Shown: positions 5,941 to 46,974 of the stretch, piece after piece | Layout: the number at the start of each line of letters is the position of its first letter | How positions within the stretch are numbered: position 1 is the stretch's first letter | Origin: Mobula birostris | Taxonomy: Eukaryota | Reading direction: 5' to 3' | Length of the DNA stretch: 64,000 bases | Assembly: GCF_030028105.1 (NCBI RefSeq) | Contig: NC_092398.1 | Coordinates: 28,862,424-28,926,423 of the forward strand | The notes under the pieces: generated by a model | The model's database searches: none | What the model saw: the letters and a program-made list of their open reading frames with translations, nothing else | Told to the model about the DNA's origin: nothing | Translations under genes and position numbers: made by a program

Positions 5941-6113
5941 TTATTGAGAAGAGGGATTGATCCGGACTATCCAAGAGTCGCAGCCAGACAGTCGCAAGTG
6001 AAAACATAAGAAGAGTCCAGCTGCTGTGCCAAGTATTCCTATAATCAGCCCACAGATCAAAACAGCAATCTGGCTTGTATCCATTTCTTCAGCACTACTT
6101 TGCTCTTCTGGTT
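5941..6113 (-). CDS. WA: WA gene 1, exon 4 (connecting peptide, transmembrane, cytoplasmic tail, stop)
   Basis: ttcacag|AA phase-1 acceptor. EPEEQSSAEEMDTSQIAVLICGLIIGILGTAAGLFLCFHLRLSGCDSWIVRINPSSQ*. The TM has the class II alpha CG-xxx-G-xx-G-xxx-G glycine pattern. TAA at 5943-5941. Confidence 0.88.
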
Positions 6114-6664
6114 CTGTGAACAAAGCACATACTCACATTTTGAACGAGGAACTAGTTTTTAAATCAGTTTGAACAAAGATGAGCTGGCAAAACTAAATTG
6201 TCCTCTTCCCCGTTTCCCTTTCTCAGCTGAATATACTTTCCAATAGCGAAGCAGGTGTTCCAAAGGTTCCAAGTGTCCAAAGTTTTCCTAGGATCAGCCC
6301 TAGACTGATTTTAGATACAAAATTATGAGGGGTATAGATAGGCTTTTTCCACTGAGGTTGAGTGATGCTGCACTAGAGGTGAAGGGTGAAGGGTGAAAGG
6401 TGAAAAGTTTAAGGGGAAGATGAGGGGAAACTACTTCGCTCAGATGATTGTGAGAGTGTGGAACGAGCTGTCAGCAGATGTGGTGCATGCAAGCTTGATT
6501 TCAACGTTTAAGAGAAGTTTGGATAGGTATATGGATGTAGGGGTTTGGAGGGCTATGGTCGAGGGAAGTAGGCAGTTTAAATTGTTTGGCATGGACTAGT
6601 TGGGGCAAATGTCCTACTTCTGTGCTGTACTTTTCCATGACTAAATGACTAAATGGCTATCAAT

Positions 6665-7719: not shown

Positions 7720-8001
7720 CCCAGTAAATTACTTTTTCCTCTTTGCTGATTTTATGGAGCACTCTACAGGAATACATGTCACCTTCTGCTGGCTGGATGT
7801 ATGTGTAGTGGAGCACTTGAAATCGCCAATCTTTGCCAAATGAGAGGTGTGAGGAGTTAACTTCGCCATTGACAGGCTGCGCGTTCTTCTGTAACATTAC
7901 AATTACGGTTGGTGGGAAAATGCCGCTGACAAAACAGGTCAAAGTGTTTACCTCCCCGAAGACAGCTGGTTTCTCTAAGTACAGATAGAGCTCACCGATT
8001 T
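7720..8001 (-). CDS. WA: WA gene 1, exon 3 (beta2-microglobulin-like Ig C1 alpha2 domain)
   Basis: 282 nt, phase 1/1, ttcttttag acceptor and G|GTAAGA donor. Translation EIGELYLYLEKPAVFGEVNTLTCFVSGIFPPTVIVMLQKNAQPVNGEVNSSHLSFGKDWRFQVLHYTYIQPAEGDMYSCRVLHKISKEEKVIYW. It carries equivalents of human beta2m Y10, L39, L54, F56, W60, F62 and W95, and both cysteines. Confidence 0.93.
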
Positions 8002-9637: not shown

Positions 9638-9902
9638 CATTTGGGGGGGAGAGAGTTGTCGGTTAACAACTTTGCCTGATCCATCAGGTTCTTTGCCAAT
9701 GCGATTGTGTTGTCCTTATTTTCTTCCAACAGGCTATCAATAGTTTTACGGAAGTGTTCTAAGTTAGCCAAGTGAAACTGAGCTCTCGGTAACGTGGTGT
9801 CATAGTAACCAATGCTTCTATCCTGAGTCTTCAACTCGGCTGCCCCCTTGGGTAGGCTGGGGTCATCTGCAAAGAAGATGGTGACTTCCAATGTGTCTGT
9901 CT
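9638..9902 (-). CDS. WA: WA gene 1, exon 2 (alpha1 domain, ETDTLEVTIFFADD...IALAKNLMDQAKLLTDNSLPP)
   Basis: Polypyrimidine acceptor ttttatcctttcag|AG and donor G|GTGAGT. Open frame resembles a class II alpha1 domain (beta strands, then the helix IALAKNLMDQAK). Length is 265 nt, one more than the 264 needed for phase 1 to phase 1; the excess maps best to the G7 run at 9643-9649. Confidence 0.8.
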
Positions 9903-14712: not shown

Positions 14713-14788
14713 CGGCCACTTTGTAGGTAGTCCCCGAACAGGGGCGGAGGAGCAGGAGGAGCGCCCAAGCAGCGGGATAACGACCCAT
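14713..14788 (-). CDS. WA: MHC W-category alpha chain gene 1, exon 1 (leader peptide MGRYPAAWALLLLLRPCSGTTYKVA)
   Basis: ATG at 14788, hydrophobic core WALLLLL and small-residue cleavage region PCSG. 76 nt ending in phase 1 at a G|GTGAGT donor. Lies in a CpG-rich island and is in frame with the acceptor at 9902. Confidence 0.8.
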
Positions 14789-14789
14789 G

Positions 14790-15065
14790 GCAGAAACCGT
14801 CCCGAAAGCAAAAGAGCGGCGGGAGGAGGAGGAGACGCCGCCGCCATTCAGCCCGCCCACCGACCTCACTCTCCTCCTCCTCCACCCAAGCCAAGCCTCC
14901 GGCGGGAGCGCGACTGGCCCGACGTCTGTGATGGCGCGCGCCCGGGGAGCGCGAGCGGCCCGCCGGCGGTGATGCGCGCGCCCGGTGGAGGGGGTGGGGG
15001 GGGTGGGGATGGTCTTTCTGGCGGGAAGCCACGGTAGCCAATGAGCGAGACCTGGCTGACTCGGG
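14790..15065 (-). promoter_or_regulatory. CpG-island promoter region of WA gene 1 with CCAAT box
   Basis: Very GC- and CpG-rich against an AT-rich background. Near-direct repeat GTGATG(G)CGCGCGCCCGG at 14928-14945 and 14969-14985. CCAAT at 15038-15042. No TATA box seen. Confidence 0.55.
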
Positions 15066-15104
15066 ATGGGGGGGTGGGGTCACTGACAGGTGTAGTGAAG
15101 GGCA

Positions 15105-16152
15105 GATGAGGGACAGGTAGTTGTAGAGGATGGGAGGGGTGAGGGATAGACAGTAGTAGAGGATGGGAGGAGTGAGGGATAGACAGTTGTAGAGGATGGG
15201 AGGGGTGAGGGATGGACAGTTGTAGAGGATGGGTGGGGTGAGGGATAGGAAGTTGCAGAGGATGGGAGGGGTGAGGGATAGACAGTTGTAGAGGATGGGA
15301 GGGGTGAGGGATAGACAGTTGTAGAGGATGGGAGGGGTGAGGGATAGACAGTTGTAGAGGATGGGAGGGGTGAGGGATAGACAGTTGTAGAGGATGGGAG
15401 GGGTGAGGGATAGACAGTTGTAGAGGATGGGAGGGGTGAGGGATAGACAGTTGTAGAGGATGGGAGGGGTGAGGGATAGACAGTTGTAGAGGATGGGAGG
15501 GGTGAGGGATAGACAGTTGCAGAGGATGGGAGGGGTGAGGGATAGACAGTTGCGGAGGATTGGAGGGGTGAGGGATAGACACTTGTAGAGGATGGGAGGG
15601 GTGAGGGATAGACAGTTGTAGAGGATGGGGGTGAGGGATAGACTGTTGTAGAGGATGGGGGTGAGGGATAGACAGTTGTAGAGGATGGGAGGGGTGAGGG
15701 ATAGACAGTTGTAGAGGATGGGAAGGGTGAGGGATAGACAGTTGTGGAGGTTGGGAGGGTGAAGGATAGACAGTTGCAGAGGATGGGAGGGGGTGAGGGA
15801 TAGACAGTTGTGGAGGATGGGAGGGGTGAGGGATAGACAGTTGTAGAGGATGGGAGGGGTGAGGGATAGACAGTTGTGGAGGATGGGAGGGGTGAGGGAT
15901 AGACACTTGTAGAGGATGGGAGGGGTGAGGGATAGACAGTTGTGGAGGATGGGAGGGGTGAGGGATAGACACTTGTAGAGGATGGGAGGGGTGAGGGATA
16001 GACAGTTGTAGAGGATGGGGGTGAGGGATAGACTGTTGTAGAGGATGGGGGTGAGGGATAGACAGTTGTAGAGGATGGGAAGGGTGAGGGATAGACAGTT
16101 GTAGAGGATGGGGGTGAGGGATAGACAGTTGTGGAGGTTGGGAGGGTGAAGG
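15105..16152. repeat. 33-bp G-rich minisatellite, about 31 copies
   Basis: Unit GAGGGATAGACAGTTGTAGAGGATGGGAGGGGT with 30- and 34-bp variants and very high unit identity. It produces the three long repetitive minus-strand ORFs. Confidence 0.97.
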
Positions 16153-16159
16153 ATCTTGC

Positions 16160-16370
16160 TAGTTTCATAAACTTTCTCTTGTCTGTCTTTATTACAAATC
16201 TTTTGCCTGTAAACGTCATCCAGATTAATTTCACATCCAGATGAAAGATACTTCTGAGCCCTCATCAGATCATCTAAATGTTCCACTTCTAGTCTGCTCC
16301 AGGATTTACGTTTGATTTAATTCATAAAACTGAATCCACGATCGCAGTCAGCACTAAAGAAAATTCTAGC
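16160..16370 (-). mobile_element. hAT transposase C-terminal dimerisation-domain remnant
   Basis: Minus frame reads FSADCDRGFSFMN*IKRKSWSRLEVEHLDDLMR, matching the hAT S-x-x-C-E-R-G-F-S...RNRL...LMR motif. Confidence 0.7.
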
Positions 16371-17745: not shown

Positions 17746-18464
17746 ATGAACACTACCTCACTTTTTTTAAAATATATTTTAATCTATTCAATGTACTGGA
17801 ATTGATTTACTTGGTTATCTATTTTTTTTTCTCCAAAATCATTTATTGCCGCTGCTAATAGACGCCGGTGAAAATAAACCTGATTCTGTTCATTTGTAGT
17901 TTTACAGCGGCAGTACAGTGCACAGACCATAAATTAGTGCAAAAGCAAAAGAACAGTGAAGTAGTGTTCGTGGATTCATGAACTGTTCCGAAATCTGATG
18001 GCAGAAGCTGGCTCTTCAGCCTCCTGAACCTCATCCCGATGATTGTAATGAGAAGAGGCCTTGTCCCAGTTGGAGAGCTGTGTGTGTCTATATACGACAA
18101 ACTACGAGAGGAATTGACTGAGGCAGGCAGAAGAGAAACAATTGAGGGAGAGGGAAAAGGGGGGAAGGCAGGGAGTGCAAACAAGGTAAATGATGTGTGC
18201 CAAATATGGACAAGTAGTATTGGTTTGGATGTGAATCTTGGCCAGCATGCACCAGTTGGGCTGAAGGGCCTGCTTCTATGCTGTATGGCTCTATAGAGCT
18301 TTTTGAGGCATTAATGTTGTGATGTCTAACATAAAAGGAAAGAGATTCAACCTGTAACTGATAGATGCAATCTGCAACTCAGGAGATAGAAATCACCTTG
18401 TCTTAAGTAACTCATTCCCAACTCAGAATGGCTTTGAGATGACTCAAACTATCCTTCTAATTAG

Positions 18465-18734
18465 TGTTTATCTGGGATGTACATCAGCTGGACAATCTAC
18501 TCCAGCACAGCTCCATGGTTCTCGAGAACAGACCTGCGATTTGGTTACGACGGCAAAGATGTCATCTATTTTGATTTCTCTGTGAGGAAATTTGGGGCCA
18601 GTATTTCACTTTTGGAAGCTTTCATCAGAGGCCTGAACCACTGCAATCCCCGGGCTGTCATTGAAGTTAACCGTACCAAGCCTTCGTCCCTTTCATTGCA
18701 GAGAGCATTTACCAGAATGTTCTGACCCTGAACT
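18465..18734 (+). pseudogene. WB: MHC W-category beta chain (WB)-like beta1 exon, frameshifted
   Basis: ccttctaattag| acceptor and |GTAAGT donor bound exactly 270 nt, the usual class II beta1 exon size. The central frame reads DLRFGYDGKDVIYFDFSVRKFGASISLLEAFIRGLN, with the class I alpha2-type YDGKD motif followed by class II beta1-like YFD. The phase-1 entry/exit frame contains three stops, so compensating +1 and -1 indels are needed. Oriented head-to-head with WA gene 1. Confidence 0.65.
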
Positions 18735-18984
18735 GTAAGTGGTTAACTGGATGATTGAATACAAGCTCACGTTGAGCAGAGGAAGTTATTTTGACCTTGG
18801 ACTGCAGCCAATTCTACAAGTGCCAGGAACAGTATCCCCACCTTTATTCTTTAACAAAAATACTTGTATTATAAATTCAAGCCAGTGATAGTACTATTAT
18901 TTCTGAATCAGATTTAGTATCACCGACATAGGTCATGAATGTTGTTTTGCAGCAGCAGTACATTGCGATACATAATATTGATAG

Positions 18985-20650
18985 ATCATCATCATCATCA
19001 GGTGCCATGCCCAGTTTGAGCTTTGACTGCCATGGCCCACACACTCCTGTTTCGGGTCAAGTGAATCAATTCATTGGTATTAATTTCCAATTCTCTAGCT
19101 GCTGTCTCCATCATCATTTGTCTTTCTCTTCATCTTGCTTTCTTCCCTTCAATCTTTCCCATAATTACCGTGCATTCTAACTCCTCTTTCCAAATGACAT
19201 GTCCAATGAAGTCACGTTGCCTTTTCATGATCTCATACATTATTTCTCTATTTGTGTTTGTTCAGTTCATGACATCATCGTTAGATATTCATTTTGTCCA
19301 TGATATTCTTTGCATCCTCCTCAAAAACCAAATCTCTGCTGCTACAATTCGTTTCCTCATGTTACTAGATATTGTCCAACATTCTGAGCCATATAACATA
19401 ACTGGATAAATGTAACATTTCAGTACTCTGAGGCAGGTTTTCATGCCTAGCATAGTATTGGTCAGTATACTCTCCATTCTTGTAAAAGTGTCTTTTTCCA
19501 GCCCTATTATTCTTTTGATGTGCAAGTCGCACCTGCCATCTGATATCACCCAGCTTCCTAAGTAGCAGAAGTTCTTTACTTGTTTTATGTCTTCCCCATT
19601 TATTCTTAGCCTGCAGATAGGATTCTCCTTCTTTTTGGGTATCACCATACATTGTCTTTTTGCAATTGATAGATAGACCCATTTTTTTTCCATTTTCTTC
19701 AACAATTATATCAATTAAGTTTTGTAGCTCTTCCTTTGTACTCGCAATTAACATAGTGTCATCTGCATATCTGAAATTATTGATGTTTTCACCGCCAACT
19801 TTGATTCCCAAGATGTCTCTTATTTTTTGTAATATTGTTTCACTGTACACATTAAATAAATCAGGGGAGAAAACACACCCTTGTCTAACGCCTCTTGATT
19901 TTCATAAACTGACTCACTTCTCCATCTATTCTTACAGCGGCAGTTTGTTCCCAGTACAGATTTCTGATTAGGCAGAGGTCTTTCGAATCCAGATCTAGAG
20001 TTTTCTGTAAAATTTCAAGTAACTTATTGTACTTCACTTTATCAAATGCTTTTGTGTAGTTGATAAAACAAACAAGCAAATCTTTTTTCACTTGAATAGA
20101 TAGCTCATTCTGATAGGATCCTTAACATCAATATCGCATTTCTTGTACCTTTGTCTTTCACAAAACCATTGTTCTTTGCCTGTTTCAGCTTGTATCTTAC
20201 TTTTAGCTCTTGTCATCAAAATTCTTAGAAGTATCTTGGTGACATGACTCATTAAACTTATGGTCCTATGTAATCACATTCTATTGCTCCAGCTTTCTTA
20301 GGAAGAGTGATAAATACTGATTTTTTCATCTCTTCTGTTATTATTCTAGTCTCGTAAATGTCATTGATTAAATCAGTAAATGTTTCAATTCCATAATCTT
20401 CAAGGGCAATAATTTGTACTATTACTAATTCATCAGGACCTGCTGCCTTTCCTTTCCTCATCTTATTTATGCATTATGAACTTCGATTTTAAAATACTTG
20501 GACCTTCAATGTTTTTCTTAATTTCTCCTTGATTGTCTTCAAAAATTCCTGAATATACTCAGTCCATTTGTTCATAATCGCATCTTTTTCCATAATAATG
20601 GCACCGTCCTTTGCTTTCAAACATCCACCTGAAGAACAGAGGAGCTTTTT
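18985..20650 (-). mobile_element. RTE-clade LINE, 5'-truncated
   Basis: (CAT)n tail at about 18985-19000. ORF fragments FINYTKAFDKVKYNKL, NINNFRYADDTMLIA, YIYPVMLYGSECWT, KGKAAGPDEL. Confidence 0.9.
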
Positions 20651-20659
20651 GGCTCTCAG

Positions 20660-21521
20660 CAAAGTGATCCAAATTAATTACAAATATAAAGCACAAAATA
20701 ATTGATTGCATAAATATTCACCCACTTCAACTCAGTATTCAGTAGCTTTACCTTTGGCAGCAATTACAGCCTTGAGTCTGTGTGGATAGGAATCTATCAG
20801 CTTTGCACATCTGGATTCTACAAATTTTCCCCATTCTTCTTTACGAAACTGTTCAAGTTCTGTCAGATTGCACAGGAGTTGTGAGTGAACAGCTCTTTTC
20901 AAGCCCAGCCGCAAATTCTCAATTGGATTGAGGTCTGGACTCTGACTTGGCCACTCCAGGACATTAACTTTGTTGTTTTTAAGCCATTCCTCTGTAGCTT
21001 CTGCTTTATGCTTGGAGTCATTGTCTTGCTGGAAAACAAATCTTTTCCTAATTCGCAGTGCTCCTGCAGAATGCTTCAGGTTTTCCTCCACGATTTCCCT
21101 GTATTTTGCTGCGTTCATTTTACCCTCTACCTTCAGAAGCCTTCCAGGGCTTGCTGCCGTAAAGCATCCCCACAGTATGCTTCACAGGAGGGATGGTGTG
21201 TTTTTGATGATGTGCGGTGTTTGGTTTATGCGAAACATAGTGCATAGTCTGATGGCCAAAAGCTCACTTTTGGATTCACCAGACCATAGAACCTTTTTCC
21301 AGGTGACTTCAGAGTCTCCCACATGCCTTCTGGCAAGTCCTAGCCAGTTTCTTTCATGTGAGTTTTTTCAACAGTGGATTTCTCTTTGCCACTCTCCCAT
21401 AAAGCTGTGACTGGTGAAGCACACGGGCAACAGTTGTATACGCAGTCTCTGCCATCTCAGCTACTAAAGTTTGTAACTCCTCCAGAGTTGTCATAGATCT
21501 CTTGGTGGCCTCTCTCACTAG
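20660..21521 (-). mobile_element. Tc1/mariner transposon, 3' part (split by a CR1 insertion)
   Basis: ORF 20732-21118 reads FQQDNDSKH...LEWPSQSPDLNPIENL, the Tc1 DD34E region. It continues at 25927, where RRG|LVREATK rejoins across the CR1. Confidence 0.92.
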
Positions 21522-24500
21522 AAGAGAGGAGGTTAGTTCACAACAGGGGGATAGGAACAAATGCAGAGAGACAGAGGGGTGTAAAATGAGGGTAGAAGCA
21601 AAATGTAGTAAGGTGAAAAGTAGAAGTGGCAGGCCGGCAAATCCAGGGCAAAAATCAAAAAGGACCACTTTTCAACATAATCGTATAAGGGCTAATAGTG
21701 TTGTAAAAGCAAGCCTGAAGGCTTTGTGTGTCAATGCAAGGAGCATTCGTAACAAGGTGGATGAATTAAAAGTGCAGATAGTTATTAATGAATATGATAT
21801 AGTTGGGATCACAGAGACATGGCTCCAGGGTGACCAAGGATGGGAGCTCAACATTCAGGGATATTCAATATTCAGGAGGGATAGAGATGAAAGAAAAGGA
21901 GGTGGGTTACATTGCTGGTTAGAGAGGAGATTAACGCAATAGAAAGGAAAGATATTAGCCAGGAGGATGTGGAATCGATATGGGTAGAGCTGCATAACAC
22001 TTAGGGGCCGAAAACGCTGGTGGGAGTTGTGTACAGGCCACCTAACAGTAGTAGTGAGGTTGGGGATGGCATTAAAAAGGAAATTAGAAATGCATGCAAT
22101 AAAGGAACAGCAGTTATAATGGGTGACTTCAATCTACATATAGATTGGCTGAACCAAATTGGTAAGTGTGCTGAGGAAGAGGATTTCCTGGAATGTATGC
22201 GGGATGGTTTTTTGAACCAACATGTCGAGGAACCACCTAGAGAGCAGGCTATTCTGGACTGGGTTTTGAGCAATGAGGAAAGGTTCATTAGCAATCTTGT
22301 CGTGAGAGGCCCCTTGGGTAAGATTGACTATAATATGGTGGAATTCTTCATTAAGATGGAGAGTGAGATAGTTAATTCAGGAACAAAGGTTCTGAACTTA
22401 AAGAAGGGTAACTTTGAAGGTATGAGACGTGAATTAACTAAGATAGACTGGCAAATGATACTTAAAGGGTTGATGGTTGATATGCAATGGCAAACATTTA
22501 AAGATCACATGGATGAACTACAACAATTGTTCATCCCAGTTTGGCAAAAGAATAAATCAGGGAAGGTAGTGCACCCATGGCTGACAAGGGAAATTAGGGA
22601 TAGTATCAAATCCAACAAAGAAACATACAAATTAGCCAGAAAAAGCAGCTCCCCTGAGGACAGGGAAAATTCAGAGTCCAGCAGAGGAGGACAAAGAACT
22701 TAATTAGGAAAGGGAAAAAAGATTATGAGAGAAAACTGGCAAGGAACAGAAAAACTGACTGTAAAAGCTTTTATAGATATGAAAAGAAAAAAAATTGGTT
22801 AAGACAAATGTAGGTCCCTTACAGACTGTCACAACAGCAGGGCATTGGGAGCAAGGGTGGACCCAAATGCAAGACACATCTTGTGAGGTTACTTAGATTT
22901 AGTTTATTGTTCGATTCCAGGAGAGCAAGGCAGGAGCAGGAAATAGCAAACTGGAAGAGGACTCAGGACTATGACAGGGCTGGGACCAAGGGTCTGGGCT
23001 TGGACTTGGAATCGGCTCCTAGAACTAAAGGAGACATGAAGAGGCTAGGGTATGGACTCCAAGCCAGGGACTTGGCAAAGACCTAGTACCTGGGTCTTGC
23101 CTCAGGCTCAGACCCCAGAACCAGGCAAGGACATGACATGGGCTAGGGAGAGGAGGAACATGGGAACACAGAGCCTCAGTCTCAGGGAGCAGGTATATGG
23201 AACCATGGACACATACACAAAACAGAGTCAGGACCCCTCCTTGGGTACAGGACATAGAGCCAGGACTCATGACCGTCCACAGGGCAACAGCAAGACAGCC
23301 TGACCTACCCGACAGAGGCAAGGACAAAACAGAACATGACTCCCCAGGGGGCAACAGTAAATCAGCCTGTCCTACCCCACAGAGGCAAGGACAAGACACA
23401 ACATGACCCCCCACAGGCCAACAGCAAAACAACCAGACTTACCCCACAGAGGCAAGGACAAGACAAGACAAGACCAACACAAATAAGCACCAGACAGTAC
23501 CCATCTGGCTCCAGTGATGGAACTAGACCAAAGCACAAGAGGGGGCGGCAGATGAGGGCTAGAGGCCAGAGGGGCAGAGAAGGGATTCAGACAAGGGGGT
23601 AGGACTGGAATCACAGACCACCAGGTCCAGGACTCGACTTAGTTCTCGAATGCCGCCAGGTACAGCACTCAACTTGGTGCTCGAATGCCGCCAGGGCCAG
23701 CACTCGACTTGGTGCTCAGATGCCGCCAGAGCCAGGGCTTGGACGTGGTACTTGTATCCTCTGGGTAGCGGCGAGCTCTAGACTTGACCAAGGAACAGTA
23801 GACAGCCGTTCTTGATTCCCTCCGGCGGGTTAACTGACGGAGCCAGCTCGGTGAGGGAACTTGACAAGGTTGCTCCGGTGAGGAAAGGCGAATTATTGGC
23901 ACTCGCTTCGGGCGGACACTAGCTTGATCCGGCCAGCTAACATTGGTACGCCATAACCTTGATGACTTTGCAGACGCTCCCGCGCCCAACGGCTGAAAGC
24001 CGGAAACTATAAACTACCGCTTCAGCCGAGCGTTAATTGCCTCTAATCACCAAAGTCAAGGGACACAGGAAAACAGGGAATCAACGGTCCGGATCGCAAC
24101 ATAAACAAGGTAAATTTAAAGGGACTCCGATCCAGACCATGACACAGACAGAAACAGGTGAATTGATTATGGGGAACAAGGACATAGCAGAACAATTGAA
24201 TAACTACTTTGGTTCTGTCTTCGCTAAGGAGGACATAAATAATCTTCCGGAAATAGTAGGGGACAGAGGGTCCAGTGAGTTGGAAGAACTGAGGGAAATA
24301 CATGTTAGTAGGGAAGTGGTGTTATGTAAATTGAAAGGATTAAAGGCAGATAAATCCCCAGGGCCAGATGGTCTGCATCCCAGAGTGCATAAGGAAGAAG
24401 CCCAAGAAATAGTGGATGCATTAGTGATAATTTTTCAAAACTCTTTAGATTCTGGACTAGTTCCTGAGGATTGGAGGGTGGCTAATGTAACCCCACTTTG

Positions 24501-25926
24501 TAAAAAAGGAGGGAGAGAGAAACCGGGGAATTATAGACCGGTTAGCCTAACATCGGTGGTGGGGAAAATGCTAGAGTCAGTTATCAAAGATGTGATAACA
24601 GCACATTTGGAAAGCGGTGAAATCATCGGACAAAGTCAGCATGGATTTATGAAAGGAAAATCATGTCTGATGAATCTCATAGAATTTTTTGAGGATGTAA
24701 CTAGTAGAGTGGATAGGGGAGAACCAGTGGATGTGGTATATTTGGATTTTCAAAAGGCTTTTGACAAGGTCCCACACAGGAGATTAGTGTGCAAACTTAA
24801 AGCACACGGTATTGGGAGTAAGGTATTGATGTGGATAGAGATTTGGTTGGCAGACAGGAAGCAAAGAGTGGGAATAAACGGGACCTTTTCAGAATGGCAG
24901 GCAGTGACTAGTGGGATACCGCAAGGCTCAGTGCTGGGACCCCAGTTGTTTACAATATATATTAATGACTTAGATGAGGGAATTAAATGCAGCATCTCCA
25001 AGTTTGCGGATGACACGAAGCTGGGCGGCAGTGTTAGCTGTGAGGAGGATGCTAAGAGGATGCAGGGTGACTTGGATAGGTTAGGTGAGTGGGCAAATTC
25101 ATGGCAGATGCAATTTAATGTGGATAAGTGTGAGGTTATCCACTTTGGTGGCAAAAACAGGAAAACAGATTATTATCTGAATGGTTGCCAATTAGGAAAA
25201 GGGGAGGTGCAACGAGACCTGGGTGTCATTATACACCAGTCATTGAAAGTGGGCATGCAGATACAGCAGGCGGTGAAAAAGGCGAATGGTATGCTGGCAT
25301 TCATAGCAAGAGGATTCTAGTACAGGAACAGGGAGGTACTACTGCAATTGTACAAGGCCTTGGTGAGACCACACCTGGAGTATTGTGTGCAGTTTTGGTC
25401 CCCTAATCTGAGGAAAGACTTTCTTGCCATAGAGGAAGTACAAAGAAGGTTCACCAGATTGATTCCTGGGATGGCGGACTTTAAGCCTGCTGGATCGACT
25501 AGGCTTACACTCGTTGGAATTTAGAAGATTGAGGGGGGATCTTATTGAAATGTATAAAATCCTAAAGGGATTGGACAGGCTAGATGCAGGAAGTTTATTC
25601 CTGATGTTGGGGAAGTCCAGAACGAGGGGGTCACAGTTTGAGGATAAAGGGGAAGCCTTTTAGGACAGAGATTAGGAAAAACTTCTTCACACAGAGAGTG
25701 GTAAATCTGTGGAATTCTCTGCTACAGGAAACAGTTCAGGCCAGTTCATTGGCTATATTTAAGAGGAAGTTAGATATGGCCCTTGTGGCTAAAGGGATCA
25801 GGAGGTATGGAGAGAAGGCACGTACAGGTTTCTGAGTTGGATGATCAGCCATGATCATACTGAATGGCGGTGCAGGCTCGAAGGGCCGAATGGCCTACTC
25901 CTGCACCTATTTTCTATGTTTCTATG
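21522..25926 (+). mobile_element. CR1 LINE (endonuclease + RT), inserted into the Tc1 element
   Basis: APE endonuclease motifs (LCVNARSI, GITETWL, VIMGDFN) and RT motifs (DFQKAFDKVPH, QGSVLGP, FADD). (TTTCTATG)n tail ends at 25926. Frameshifts and stops present. Confidence 0.95.
22827..24144 (-). mobile_element. Solo LTR (TGTCA...TGACA) with 5-bp TSD CAGAC, inserted into the CR1
   Basis: Termini TGTCACAAC and CCATGACA. TSD CAGAC at 22822-22826 and 24145-24149. Removing the insert restores the CR1 sequence. Confidence 0.85.
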
Positions 25927-26659: not shown

Positions 26660-27620
26660 ACATTACCTCACTGTATTTTATTGTCGCCAAACAATTGATA
26701 CTCGAGTGTACAATCATCATAGCGATATTTGATTCTGCGTTTCGCGCTCCCTGGAGTACAAATCGATAGTAAATGTTAAAAATTTAAATTATAAGTCATA
26801 AATAGAAAATAGAGAAGGGAAAGTAAGGTAGTGAAAAAAAAAACAAGAGGCACGTCCGGATATTCGGAGGGTACGGCCCAGATCTAGGTCAGGATCCGTT
26901 CAGCAGTCTTATCACAGTTGGAAAGAAACTGTGCCCAAATCTGGCTGTACGAGTCTTCTAGCTCCTGAGCCTTCTCCCGGAGGGAAGAGGGAGGAAAAGT
27001 GTGTTGGCTGGGTGGGTCGTGTCCTTGATTATCTTGGCAGCACTGCTCCAACAGTGTGCATGTTAAAGTGAGTCCAAGGACCGAATATTGGTTTGTGTGA
27101 TGTGCTGGGCTGTGTTCACGATCTTCTGCAGCTTCTTCCAGTCTTGGACGGGACAGCTTCCATGCCAGGTTGTGATGTACCCAAGAAGAATGCTTTCCAC
27201 GGTTATAAAAATTAGTGAGGGTTTCAGCGGACAGGCCAAATTTCTTTAGCTTTCTCAGGAAGTAAAGGCGCTGGTAGGCCTTCTTGGCAGTGGGCTCTGC
27301 TTGGTTGGACCAAGTCAGGTCATTTGTGATAGTGGCCCCAAGACACTTAAAGCTTTTGACCTGTTTCACTTGCACACCACTGATGTAAATGGGGTCGTGC
27401 GGTCCGCTACTCCATCTGAAGTCAACAACCAATTCCTTCGTCTTGCTGATGTTGAGAGATAGGTTATTGTCTTTGCCAGGTTCACTAGGTTGTTAATTTC
27501 CTCTCTGTACTCAAAGTCATCATTACCCGAGATATGGCCTACAATTGTGGTGTCATCAGCAAGTTTATACATTGAGTTTGATGGAAACCTGGCTACACAA
27601 TCATGGGTGTACAGTTAGCT
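26660..27620 (-). mobile_element. Rex1/Babar LINE 3' part
   Basis: YKLADDTTIVG, MVVDFR...SFKCLGATITNDLTWS...KAYQRLYFLRKLKKF. Confidence 0.85.
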
Positions 27621-46692: not shown

Positions 46693-46974
46693 AGAAACCC
46701 ACCATCCACATCTGGACGGAAGACGGTTATGCTCCAGAGAAGTCGAAGACCCTGCAGTGTTACACTGAGAACTTCTAACCATTCGAGATCAAGCTCAGCT
46801 TCCTGATCAACAGGCAGCCGTTCACCGGGCCTGTCCGATCATCGCAGCTGGTGGTGGAGTCAGATTGGACCTTCAACGTCTATAAGTACATTGGGATCGA
46901 GCCAAAGGACGAGGACACATTCAGCTGTCGGGCAGCACACGTCAGCTTTGAGGAAGGGCTGACCATCTCACTAG
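46693..46974 (+). pseudogene. WA: WA gene 2, exon 3 (Ig C1 alpha2 domain) with in-frame stop
   Basis: 282 nt, phase 1/1, gtgtcccag| and G|GTATGT. KKPTIHIWTEDGYAPEKSKTLQCYTENF*PFEIKLSFLINRQPFTGPVRSSQLVVESDWTFNVYKYIGIEPKDEDTFSCRAAHVSFEEGLTISL. TAA at 46776-46778 sits in the FYP motif. The DWxF motif is present and the C-strand Trp is absent, as in beta2m. Aligns without gaps to gene 1 exon 3. Confidence 0.88.

What the first reader, a model, noticed from the sequence alone, without database searches (positions are those of the whole stretch)
18465..18734. Orphan WB-like beta1 exon with compensating frameshifts and no beta2 exon
The splice-bounded length is exactly 270 nt and the entry and exit frames agree, yet the recognisable YDGKD segment is in a different frame. 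A +1 near the 5' end and a -1 near 18675-18680 would give ...GMYISWTIYSSTAPWFSRTDLRFGYDGKDVIYFDFSVRKF...EVNRTKAFVPFIAESIYQNVLTLN. No C1-domain exon was found in the next 13 kb, which is almost entirely transposons. Inference: the partner beta gene has decayed while the alpha gene stayed intact. WA1 would then pair with a WB encoded elsewhere, or be on its way to loss.
Basis: partly seen in the sequence, partly recalled or inferred. Interest (0 to 1): 0.7.

Follow-up and report, generated by a model that had tools for sequence, protein, structure and literature searches.

The report
Dead WB beta1 exon relic
This is the leftover first-domain exon of a W-category MHC beta-chain gene (WB_DS1 lineage). 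It sits head-to-head with its alpha-chain partner in a ray genome and is broken by a real frameshift that a second species shares. The rest of the gene is missing, so this is an ordinary pseudogene fragment, not a working gene.

Summary
The exon is real. AG (18463-64) and GTAAGT (18735-40) bound exactly 270 nt. Dogfish WB_DS1 beta1 gives the two best tblastn hits of the whole window here. They are collinear but in different frames: 18495-18638 (E 7e-8) and 18674-18730 (E 0.13). Read with X at the break, the exon aligns end to end with WB_DS1 (30/79 identities, z 27). That is about as close as skate and dogfish WB_DS1 are to each other.

The frame break (one base short, 18665-18680) is not an assembly slip. 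Contigs from two DNA runs of organism A and from a DNA run of a second organism cross it without any indel. A further CGA>TGA nonsense variant (18537) is found throughout organism B and in about half the depth of organism A.

No beta2 or WB membrane-anchor exon was detected anywhere in the 64 kb, and the WB leader search was crude. The downstream DNA carries LINE and Tc1-like fragments. No RNA evidence was found.

The proposed second, compensating 5' frameshift cannot be shown; a lost acceptor at 18473-74 explains the data equally well. The neighbouring WA_DS10-like gene is not clearly intact, because its C7 run gives TGA at the splice junction. This scan already reported W-category clusters elsewhere in this genome. 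Known family, low interest.

The parts
18463..18464 (+). AG that bounds the 270-nt exon on its 5' side, preceded by a pyrimidine-rich tract. It may or may not be the ancestral acceptor.
   Evidence: Sequence read. The TAG at 18462-64 also closes frame 1 upstream.
18465..18677 (+). Frame-1 part of the WB_DS1-like beta1 pseudo-exon (CLSGMYISWTIYSS...LRFGYDGKDVIYFDF...EVNRT).
   Evidence: Translation. tblastn with dogfish WB_DS1 beta1 hits 18495-18638 at E 7e-8, 40% over 48 aa. Little skate WB_DS1L scores 28.5 bits. The only PDB hit is MHC class I alpha2 residues 109-147, E 0.047.
18678..18679 (+). Nominal position of the frame break. Two bases stand where one codon should be, a net loss of one base. 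The break can lie anywhere in 18665-18680.
   Evidence: The alignment to dogfish WB_DS1 runs through X at this point with no residue gap. The frame-3 stop TGA at 18662-64 sets the upstream limit. Contigs X1 18611-18770, X2 18653-18770 and X5 18643-18804 / 18643-18792 cross it with 0 gaps.
18680..18734 (+). Frame-3 part of the pseudo-exon (AFVPFIAESIYQNVLTLN) plus the single base of the split codon before the donor.
   Evidence: Translation. It is the second-best tblastn hit of the whole window: 18674-18730, 47% over 19 aa, query residues 66-84, collinear with the first hit.
18735..18740 (+). Consensus splice donor GTAAGT, phase 1 with respect to frame 3.
   Evidence: Sequence read.
18537..18539 (+). 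Codon of the conserved Arg in LRF(G/A)YDG. It is CGA in the window and TGA (stop) in other chromosomes.
   Evidence: 18537 C>T takes all depth in X5 (organism B) and about half the depth in X1/X2 (organism A). Codon effect computed.
18228..18331 (.). High-copy repeat on the upstream side of the unique island that holds the exon.
   Evidence: Summed contig depth of 7,000-36,000 against about 15-50 in the island (table 2).
18904..19267 (.). Very high-copy repeat starting 170 bp after the donor.
   Evidence: Summed contig depth of 3e4-4e5 in X1, with many loose ends at 18940-18988.
19368..19901 (-). LINE reverse-transcriptase fragment. It is the first of many transposon pieces downstream: DDE_3 at 20735-21181(-), endonuclease at 22005-22700(+), RVT_1 at 24037-25317(+), and others to 42 kb.
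   Evidence: Pfam RVT_1 at E 1.5e-14 and the other families listed.
9638..9902 (-). Alpha1 exon of the neighbouring WA_DS10-like gene, the published head-to-head partner lineage of WB_DS1. It ends in a C7 run (9643-9649) that leaves the donor in phase 2.
   Evidence: tblastn with little skate WA_DS10-like alpha1: 53% over 83 aa, E 2e-25. Sequence read.
7720..8001 (-). Alpha2 (C1-set) exon of the WA_DS10-like gene, 282 nt, phase 1 at both ends, open.
   Evidence: Sequence read. YSCRVLH motif found. Hit by shark WB beta2 at E 7e-6.
5944..6132 (-). Open frame holding the connecting peptide, membrane anchor and tail of the WA_DS10-like gene.
   Evidence: EPEEQSS...IAVLICGLIIGILGTAAGLFLCF...DSWIVRINPSS resembles the little skate WA_DS10-like C-terminus printed.
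14713..14788 (-). Candidate leader exon of the WA_DS10-like gene (MGRYPAAWALLLLLRPCSGTTYKVA + g|gtgagt, phase 1).
   Evidence: Signal-peptide and donor scan. It was the only candidate between 9.9 and 18.5 kb. This is inference, with no transcript evidence.

Best explanation
Positions 18465-18734 are a pseudo-exon. It is the surviving beta1 (groove-domain) exon of a W-category beta-chain gene of the WB_DS1 lineage. That gene once stood head-to-head with the WA_DS10-like alpha-chain gene on the other strand, as published for sharks.

Shown: the exon has lost one base between 18665 and 18680, so its last 18 codons are out of frame with the first 71. Some chromosomes also carry a stop codon in the conserved LRF-YDG motif. 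No beta2 or WB membrane-anchor exon is detectable in the 64 kb. The exon lies in a roughly 570-bp island of unique DNA between repeats.

Inferred: the missing exons were removed or displaced by deletion and transposon insertion. The exon makes no protein and is probably no longer spliced into a message. It has drifted neutrally since before the two sampled organisms diverged, or it persists as an old shared polymorphism.
For: Lineage. Dogfish WB_DS1 beta1 gives the two best tblastn hits of the window: 18495-18638 (E 7e-8) and 18674-18730 (E 0.13). They are adjacent, collinear and in different frames. The exon read with X at the break aligns over 79 columns with 30 identities, score 129 against 23 +/- 3.9 for shuffles. 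Dogfish against skate WB_DS1 scores 118. WB_Nds5L scores only 26 bits / 59. The only PDB hit is class I alpha2 at the YDGKD motif.

Context. The neighbour is WA_DS10-like (E 2e-25). It lies on the opposite strand and diverges from the exon, matching the published WA_DS10L/WB_DS1L head-to-head pair.

The break is real. Contigs of X1, X2 (organism A) and X5 (organism B) cover 18408-18804 with no indel inside the exon.

More damage. 18537 CGA>TGA takes all X5 depth and about half of X1/X2 depth.

Missing parts. Shark WB_DS1 beta2 finds only the two WA alpha2 exons. No other C1 motif was found. No other glycine-rich membrane anchor was found. No leader exon was found. The window contains no N.

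Neutral drift. Organism B differs at 12 of 182 positions (6.6%) over a stretch wholly inside the exon (X5 contig 18491-18672). Contigs over the flanks differ by 3.7% upstream (18220-18437) and by 4.0% and 7.4% downstream (18643-18792 and 18643-18804, which also cover the last 92 exon bases).

Expression. No RNA contigs lie on the island.
Against: The splice signals are still good, and the amino-acid similarity to dogfish WB_DS1 is no lower than that of a presumably working skate gene. So the decay is not deep.

Organism B's differences are 7 synonymous to 6 non-synonymous. That is slightly more synonymous than drift predicts, though not significant with 13 changes that are nearly all transitions.

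Absence of RNA rests on a few small runs laid as contigs. A beta2 exon more than 45 kb downstream, outside the window, cannot be excluded. Sample S1 may be the assembled animal, in which case only organism B is fully independent.
Confidence: 0.9

Rival explanations
1. The indels are assembly errors and the exon belongs to an intact WB gene.
For: The same window has a suspicious surplus base in a C7 homopolymer of the WA gene, so indel errors in this assembly are conceivable.
Against: The break is not in a homopolymer. Contigs from three DNA runs of two organisms cross it, and the 5' edge, without any gap. No beta2 or anchor exon exists in the window. A nonsense allele is also present.
Confidence: 0.02
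2. There are two compensating frameshifts (+1 within 18465-18476, -1 near 18678) in an exon whose ancestral length was 270 nt.
For: The AG-to-GT length is exactly 270 nt. A phase-1 entry at 18465 and the phase-1 exit are the same frame.
Against: The agreement has a one-in-three chance. Only 12 nt are available for the 5' event and nothing aligns there. No leader exon is available to fix the phase. Earlier notes list other WB beta1 exons of this genome as 258 nt, not 270 (unchecked). A single T at 18473 in place of A would give AG|GG, a phase-1 acceptor already in frame 1. That implies an ancestral 261-nt exon starting at the Gly that aligns with the G/A-H-M start of shark WB_DS1 (and sequences). 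One frameshift plus one lost acceptor explains the data equally well.
Confidence: 0.3
3. The exon is a relic of an MHC class I alpha2 exon or of another WB lineage, not of WB_DS1.
For: The YDGKD motif is the class I alpha2 motif, and the only PDB hit is class I. WB_Nds5L also hits the core.
Against: Class I scores 17 bits over 39 residues. WB_DS1 aligns over 79 columns, including the C-terminal helix (F-PF-AE-I), with score 129, while Nds5L scores 59. The neighbour is the WA lineage that pairs with WB_DS1. W-category beta1 domains are known to carry class I-type residues.
Confidence: 0.04
4. The similarity is due to chance and there is no exon.
For: Pfam, a 1.84-billion-protein phmmer search and the word-indexed search gave no true homologue.
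Against: Those libraries evidently lack W-category models or close relatives. The WA alpha1 exon also gets no Pfam hit, yet it matches skate WA at E 2e-25. Direct comparison with published WB_DS1 gives E 7e-8 and z 27. The splice signals and the expected genomic position agree.
Confidence: 0.01

Closest known systems
WB_DS1 / WB_DS1-like beta-chain genes of sharks and skates (Okamura et al. 2021, PMC8713811)
   Same: The beta1 sequence is 38% identical to dogfish over 79 columns, including LRF-YDG and the C-terminal F-P-[FL]-x-AE-x-I. It lies head-to-head with a WA_DS10-like gene. It has phase-1 exon borders and class I-type G35 and D37 in the YDGxD motif.
   Different: Only the beta1 exon is left. 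It has a frame break, a nonsense allele, and no beta2, anchor or leader exon. Position 32 is Gly instead of Ala, and the Gln of the first strand (Q6) aligns with Ser.
Banded houndshark WB_DS1_n2, called a possible pseudogene in the same paper (SI)
   Same: It is a decayed extra copy of the WB_DS1 lineage beside W-category genes.
   Different: In the houndshark the surviving, transcribed part is the Ig-like beta2 exon. Here it is the beta1 exon, and no transcript was seen.
HLA-DRB9, an isolated DRB exon-2 fragment next to HLA-DRA (from my own knowledge, not checked here)
   Same: It is a lone groove-domain exon of a beta-chain gene left beside an alpha-chain gene in an MHC gene cluster.
   Different: It belongs to conventional class II in a mammal, a different lineage. 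The DRA partner is fully functional and pairs with other DRB genes.
MHC class I alpha2 domain (PDB 7zqi chain A)
   Same: It shares the RFGYDGKDxIxFD core, which holds the beta2-microglobulin contact residues.
   Different: The similarity is confined to 39 residues at E 0.047, and there is no Cys pair. The rest of the exon follows WB_DS1.

Membership tests
W-category WB beta chain, WB_DS1 lineage (as a sequence relic) | The beta1 sequence is closer to WB_DS1 than to other WB lineages or other MHC groove domains. | tested here: met
   Dogfish WB_DS1 gives 40 + 22 bits, score 129, z 27. WB_Nds5L gives 26 bits, score 59. Class I in PDB gives 17 bits. WB_DS3 was compared only by eye.
W-category WB beta chain, WB_DS1 lineage (as a sequence relic) | Head-to-head pairing with a WA_DS10-like gene. 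| tested here: met
   The WA_DS10-like exons are on the minus strand at 5.9-9.9 kb, with a leader candidate at 14.7 kb. The exon is on the plus strand at 18.5 kb. The published arrangement is described.
W-category WB beta chain, WB_DS1 lineage (as a sequence relic) | Class I-type interface residues Q6, A32, G35 and D37 in beta1. | tested here: inconclusive
   G35 and D37 are present (YDGKD). Position 32 is Gly. The residue aligning with Q6 is Ser by my manual alignment of MYISW with HMIQF/HLIQL.
Functional WB gene | One open frame through a phase-1 to phase-1 beta1 exon. | tested here: not met
   There is a frame change between 18665 and 18680, present in contigs of two organisms. A TGA allele exists at 18537.
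Functional WB gene | A beta2 C1-set exon and a connecting-peptide/membrane-anchor exon downstream. | tested here: not met
   tblastn with shark WB_DS1 beta2 finds only the WA alpha2 exons at 7721-7942 and 46695-46964. No other [YF]xCx[VAIL]xH motif was found, and no other Gly-rich anchor. The search is limited to this 64-kb window.
Functional WB gene | A leader exon and transcription. | tested here: inconclusive
   No plausible leader exon lies on the plus strand at 14.7-18.46 kb (a crude scan). There is zero RNA-contig depth on 18020-18900 in X17 and no RNA holder. The runs are few and small.

The most novel reading that the evidence does not exclude
The WA_DS10-like alpha chain next door may still be functional, with the C7 run being an assembly error. 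If so, it would have lived without its ancestral head-to-head beta partner since before two ray species split. That would mean it pairs with a WB gene of another position or lineage, for example the groove-domain exon noted about 20 kb before the window, possibly tail-to-tail as another note suggests for rays. Alternatively it works without a beta chain. This would be a natural experiment on partner exchange in the MHC category proposed as the ancestor of class I.
Probability: 0.12. Interest if true: 0.55.

Novelty: new member of a known kind. Interest (0 to 1): 0.2.

Why it matters
On its own it matters little. Pseudogene fragments are routine in MHC gene clusters, and the W-category family and its WA_DS10L/WB_DS1L pairing are published.

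It is useful for annotation. The exon should be marked as a WB_DS1-like pseudo-exon and not merged into a gene model. The frame break should not be 'polished' away. The WA_DS10-like gene beside it should not be assumed to have a local partner.

Earlier notes of this scan report a second decayed WB_DS1 copy 3.7 Mb away. Together with that, this finding raises a modest evolutionary question: has this ray lost every working WB_DS1 gene, and if so, what happens to WA_DS10?

Tried and rejected
- Pfam on the frame-1 piece and on the WA alpha1 exon gave no MHC family. Pfam does not reach W-category groove domains.
- The search for homologous proteins on the 85-aa piece found no candidate. Its length window excludes full-length WB.
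- phmmer against 1.84 billion representatives gave a single hit, P0001. It is a 1225-aa translated tandem repeat matched in 19 weak stretches, so it is an artefact and not a homologue.
- The weak beta2-like hit at 27503-27607 (E 0.06) lies at the 5' end of a LINE (…VDELRAWINTWSYDIIAIGETWL…) and was rejected as chance.
- The frame-2 'signal peptide' MTQTILLISVYLG that reads across the acceptor was rejected as chance.
- A leader-exon scan on the plus strand found nothing credible.
- I considered selection on the exon from the 7 synonymous to 6 non-synonymous differences. I rejected it because there are too few changes and nearly all are transitions.
- The published WB and WA domains were typed from the paper's machine-read supplement, one domain per script. 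They may contain OCR errors, and full-length sequences were not entered.
- The look-up of sequencing runs was busy four times before it answered.
- Negative coordinates are not accepted by the search of earlier findings.

Full report
**The sequence.** An AG at 18463-64, behind a pyrimidine-rich tract, and a consensus donor GTAAGT at 18735-40 bound 270 nt.
- Counted from 18465, frame 1 reads CLSGMYISWTIYSSTAPWFSRTDLRFGYDGKDVIYFDFSVRKFGASISLLEAFIRGLNHCNPRAVIEVNRTK and then runs into unrelated residues and a stop.
- Frame 3 is closed upstream by TGA (18662-64) and TAA (18668-70). It then reads AFVPFIAESIYQNVLTLN up to one base before the donor.
- Frame 3 is also the frame that a phase-1 acceptor at 18465 would set.

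**Identity of the exon.** General libraries were blind to it.
- Pfam gave nothing for this exon or for the neighbouring WA alpha1 exon.
- The word-indexed protein search found no candidate.
- The exhaustive phmmer search returned only a translated tandem repeat, which is an artefact.
- The PDB search gave one hit: an MHC class I heavy chain, alpha2 residues 109-147, E 0.047, on RFGYDGKDVIYFD.

The paper that defined the W-category (Okamura et al. 2021, PMC8713811) prints shark and skate WA/WB proteins in its supplement. I entered single domains from there into local tblastn and pairwise alignment.
- Dogfish WB_DS1 beta1 gives the two best hits of the whole 64 kb in six frames: 18495-18638 (E 7e-8, 40% over 48 aa, query 7-54) and 18674-18730 (E 0.13, 47% over 19 aa, query 66-84). 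They are adjacent, collinear and in different frames.
- With X written at the break, the exon aligns to dogfish WB_DS1 over 79 columns with a single one-residue gap. There are 30 identities and score 129, against 23 +/- 3.9 for 500 shuffles.
- Dogfish against little skate WB_DS1-like, two presumably working genes, scores 118 with 28/76 identities.
- WB_Nds5L reaches only 26 bits / score 59. That is the level seen between lineages.
- The exon is therefore a WB_DS1-lineage beta1 exon.

**Genomic context.** On the minus strand lies a WA gene.
- Its alpha1 exon (9902-9638) is 53% identical to little skate WA_DS10-like (E 2e-25).
- It has an open 282-nt alpha2 exon (8001-7720) and an anchor/tail exon in 6132-5944.
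- A candidate leader exon lies at 14788-14713.
- In the great white shark the published pairs are WA_DS10L/WB_DS1L, WA_DS5L/WB_Nds5L and WA_Nds3L/WB_DS3L, all head-to-head. The exon thus stands exactly where the partner of this WA gene should be.

**Is the frame break real?** One read-laying run was available. It laid Logan contigs of two DNA runs of organism A (X1 and X2, one sample), a DNA run of organism B (X5) and a probable RNA run of organism A (X17).
- No DNA run shows an indel inside 18465-18734. The only indels are at 18439-18445, in the intron, and only in X5.
- Contigs X1 18611-18770, X2 18653-18770, X5 18643-18804 and X5 18643-18792 cross the break with 0 gaps.
- X1 18408-18524 and X2 18408-18514 cover the 5' edge with no difference at all.
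- The one-base deficit is therefore not an assembly slip. It is shared by a second organism that differs from the window at 4-7% of positions here.
- Caveat: sample S1 may be the assembled animal. It also has an RNA run. However, it differs from the window at several places with no reference allele visible.

**Further damage.** 18537 C>T takes all the depth in X5 and about half the depth in X1/X2.
- It turns the CGA of the conserved Arg in LRF-YDG into TGA, a CpG transition.
- A joint 18594>18715 (skips 120) occurs in X1 and X2 at the same depth as the TGA allele. Depth between these points is roughly halved. This may be a 120-bp deletion on that chromosome, but with only 25 letters on one side it is unproven.
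- Organism B's 13 listed differences in the exon are 7 synonymous and 6 non-synonymous, including the stop. They are nearly all transitions, so this is no evidence of constraint.
- The X5 contig lying wholly inside the exon (18491-18672) differs at 12 of 182 positions (6.6%). The flank contigs differ by 3.7% upstream and by 4.0% and 7.4% downstream; the two downstream contigs also cover the last 92 exon bases.

**The rest of the gene.**
- Houndshark WB_DS1 beta2 finds only the two WA alpha2 exons: 7721-7942 minus, and 46695-46964 plus, the latter with an in-frame stop. It finds nothing else better than E 0.06, and that hit lies at the start of a LINE.
- A motif scan for the C1-set [YF]xCx[VAIL]xH gives the same two exons.
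- The only glycine-rich membrane anchor is WA's.
- No credible leader exon lies on the plus strand between 14.7 and 18.46 kb.
- The window has no N.
- Downstream ORFs are LINE reverse transcriptase and endonuclease fragments and a Tc1-like DDE fragment.
- The exon sits in a roughly 570-bp unique island between high-copy repeats at 18228-18331 and 18904-19267.

**Expression.**
- X17 has zero depth on 18020-18900 apart from the 18228-18331 repeat.
- A dedicated RNA search of the island found no holder.
- This is weak negative evidence only.

**The second frameshift.** The claim rests on AG 18463-64 being the ancestral phase-1 acceptor.
- Homology in frame 1 starts at about 18474-18477 (G-M-Y-I-S-W against shark G/A-H-M/L-I/L-Q). 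Only 12 nt are therefore available for a 5' event, and nothing can be aligned there.
- An equally economical reading is that the ancestral acceptor was at 18473-74, now TG. AG|GG there is phase 1 in frame 1 and gives a 261-nt exon before the one-base loss. That is closer to the 258-nt WB beta1 exons that earlier notes list for this genome (unchecked).
- I rate the two-frameshift version at about 0.3. Only one break is demonstrated.

**The alpha gene.** It is not shown to be intact.
- The alpha1 exon ends ...CTC CCC CCC AAA TG|GTGAGT, while the alpha2 exon begins AA ATC GGT GAG after its AG.
- With seven C the junction reads TG+A, a stop.
- With six C it would read ...SLPPN-E-IGELYLY, which matches skate ...SLPSNEIGEALLY.
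- The simple alternative to 'beta decayed, alpha intact' is that the whole WA_DS10L/WB_DS1L pair at this locus is dying. The second WA gene in the window (WA_DS5-like, 45-49 kb) carries a stop in alpha2 and also has no WB partner in the window.

**Comparison and novelty.**
- The family, its lineages, the head-to-head pairing and even a possible WB_DS1 pseudogene in houndshark are published.
- Earlier notes of this scan call the genome giant manta ray. They report other W-category clusters 125-270 kb before this window and a decayed WB_DS1 copy 3.7 Mb away. I did not test these.
- My own evidence for a ray is only that WA is closest to the skate sequence.
- The finding is a correct and careful reading of a pseudogene fragment: a new member of a known kind, of low general interest.
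- The useful facts are the proof that the break is real and shared across organisms, and the extra nonsense allele.

Noticed in passing
window 9643-9649 (minus strand C7; G7 on plus): The WA_DS10-like alpha1 exon ends in a C7 run. This puts the donor in phase 2 against a phase-1 alpha2 acceptor, so the spliced message reads TGA at the junction. With six C it would match skate ...SLPSNEIGE. It is either an assembly error or a null allele.
   Followed up: partly
window 14713-14788 (minus): Candidate WA_DS10-like leader exon, MGRYPAAWALLLLLRPCSGTTYKVA with a phase-1 GTGAGT donor. It lies 4.8 kb upstream of the alpha1 exon in a GC-rich stretch.
   Followed up: partly
window 14900-16250: A long tandem repeat, open on the minus strand in three frames for up to 525 aa ([11 protein letters not shown]... 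units). It lies between the WA leader candidate and the WB relic. The published bullhead-shark WA_DS10-like entry also starts with a repeat-like N-terminus (SKLFPSLLLPS...).
   Followed up: no
window 46776-46778 (plus): An in-frame stop in the alpha2 exon of the second WA gene (WA_DS5-like): ...LQCYTENF*PFEIKLSFL. No WB_Nds5L-like beta1 or beta2 exon, its published partner, is present anywhere in the window.
   Followed up: partly
window 18594-18715: Contigs of X1 and X2 that carry the TGA allele jump from 18594 to 18715, and depth between those points is about halved. This may be a 120-bp deletion allele inside the pseudo-exon. Only 25 letters lie on one side of the jump.
   Followed up: partly
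window 18647-18707: The window differs from all laid contigs of organism A at 18647, 18652, 18668 and 18673, and from the larger part of their depth at 18707. Yet it is identical to one set of them across 18408-18640. At four of these five sites organism B has the non-window letter (at 18673 only in part of its depth). This is either a mosaic haplotype or a small conversion tract.
   Followed up: no
window 18228-18331 and 18904-19267: Two very high-copy short repeats with summed contig depth up to 4e5. They are also present in the probable RNA run. They bracket the unique island that holds the exon.
   Followed up: no
protein P0001: The only phmmer hit in 1.84 billion proteins is a 1225-aa perfect tandem repeat of about 60 aa (…WFWTNLSLPWFHRHDTPHYHDSEPT…). 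Its E 2e-20 comes from summing 19 weak matches. It is a warning example of repeat-inflated E-values.
   Followed up: yes
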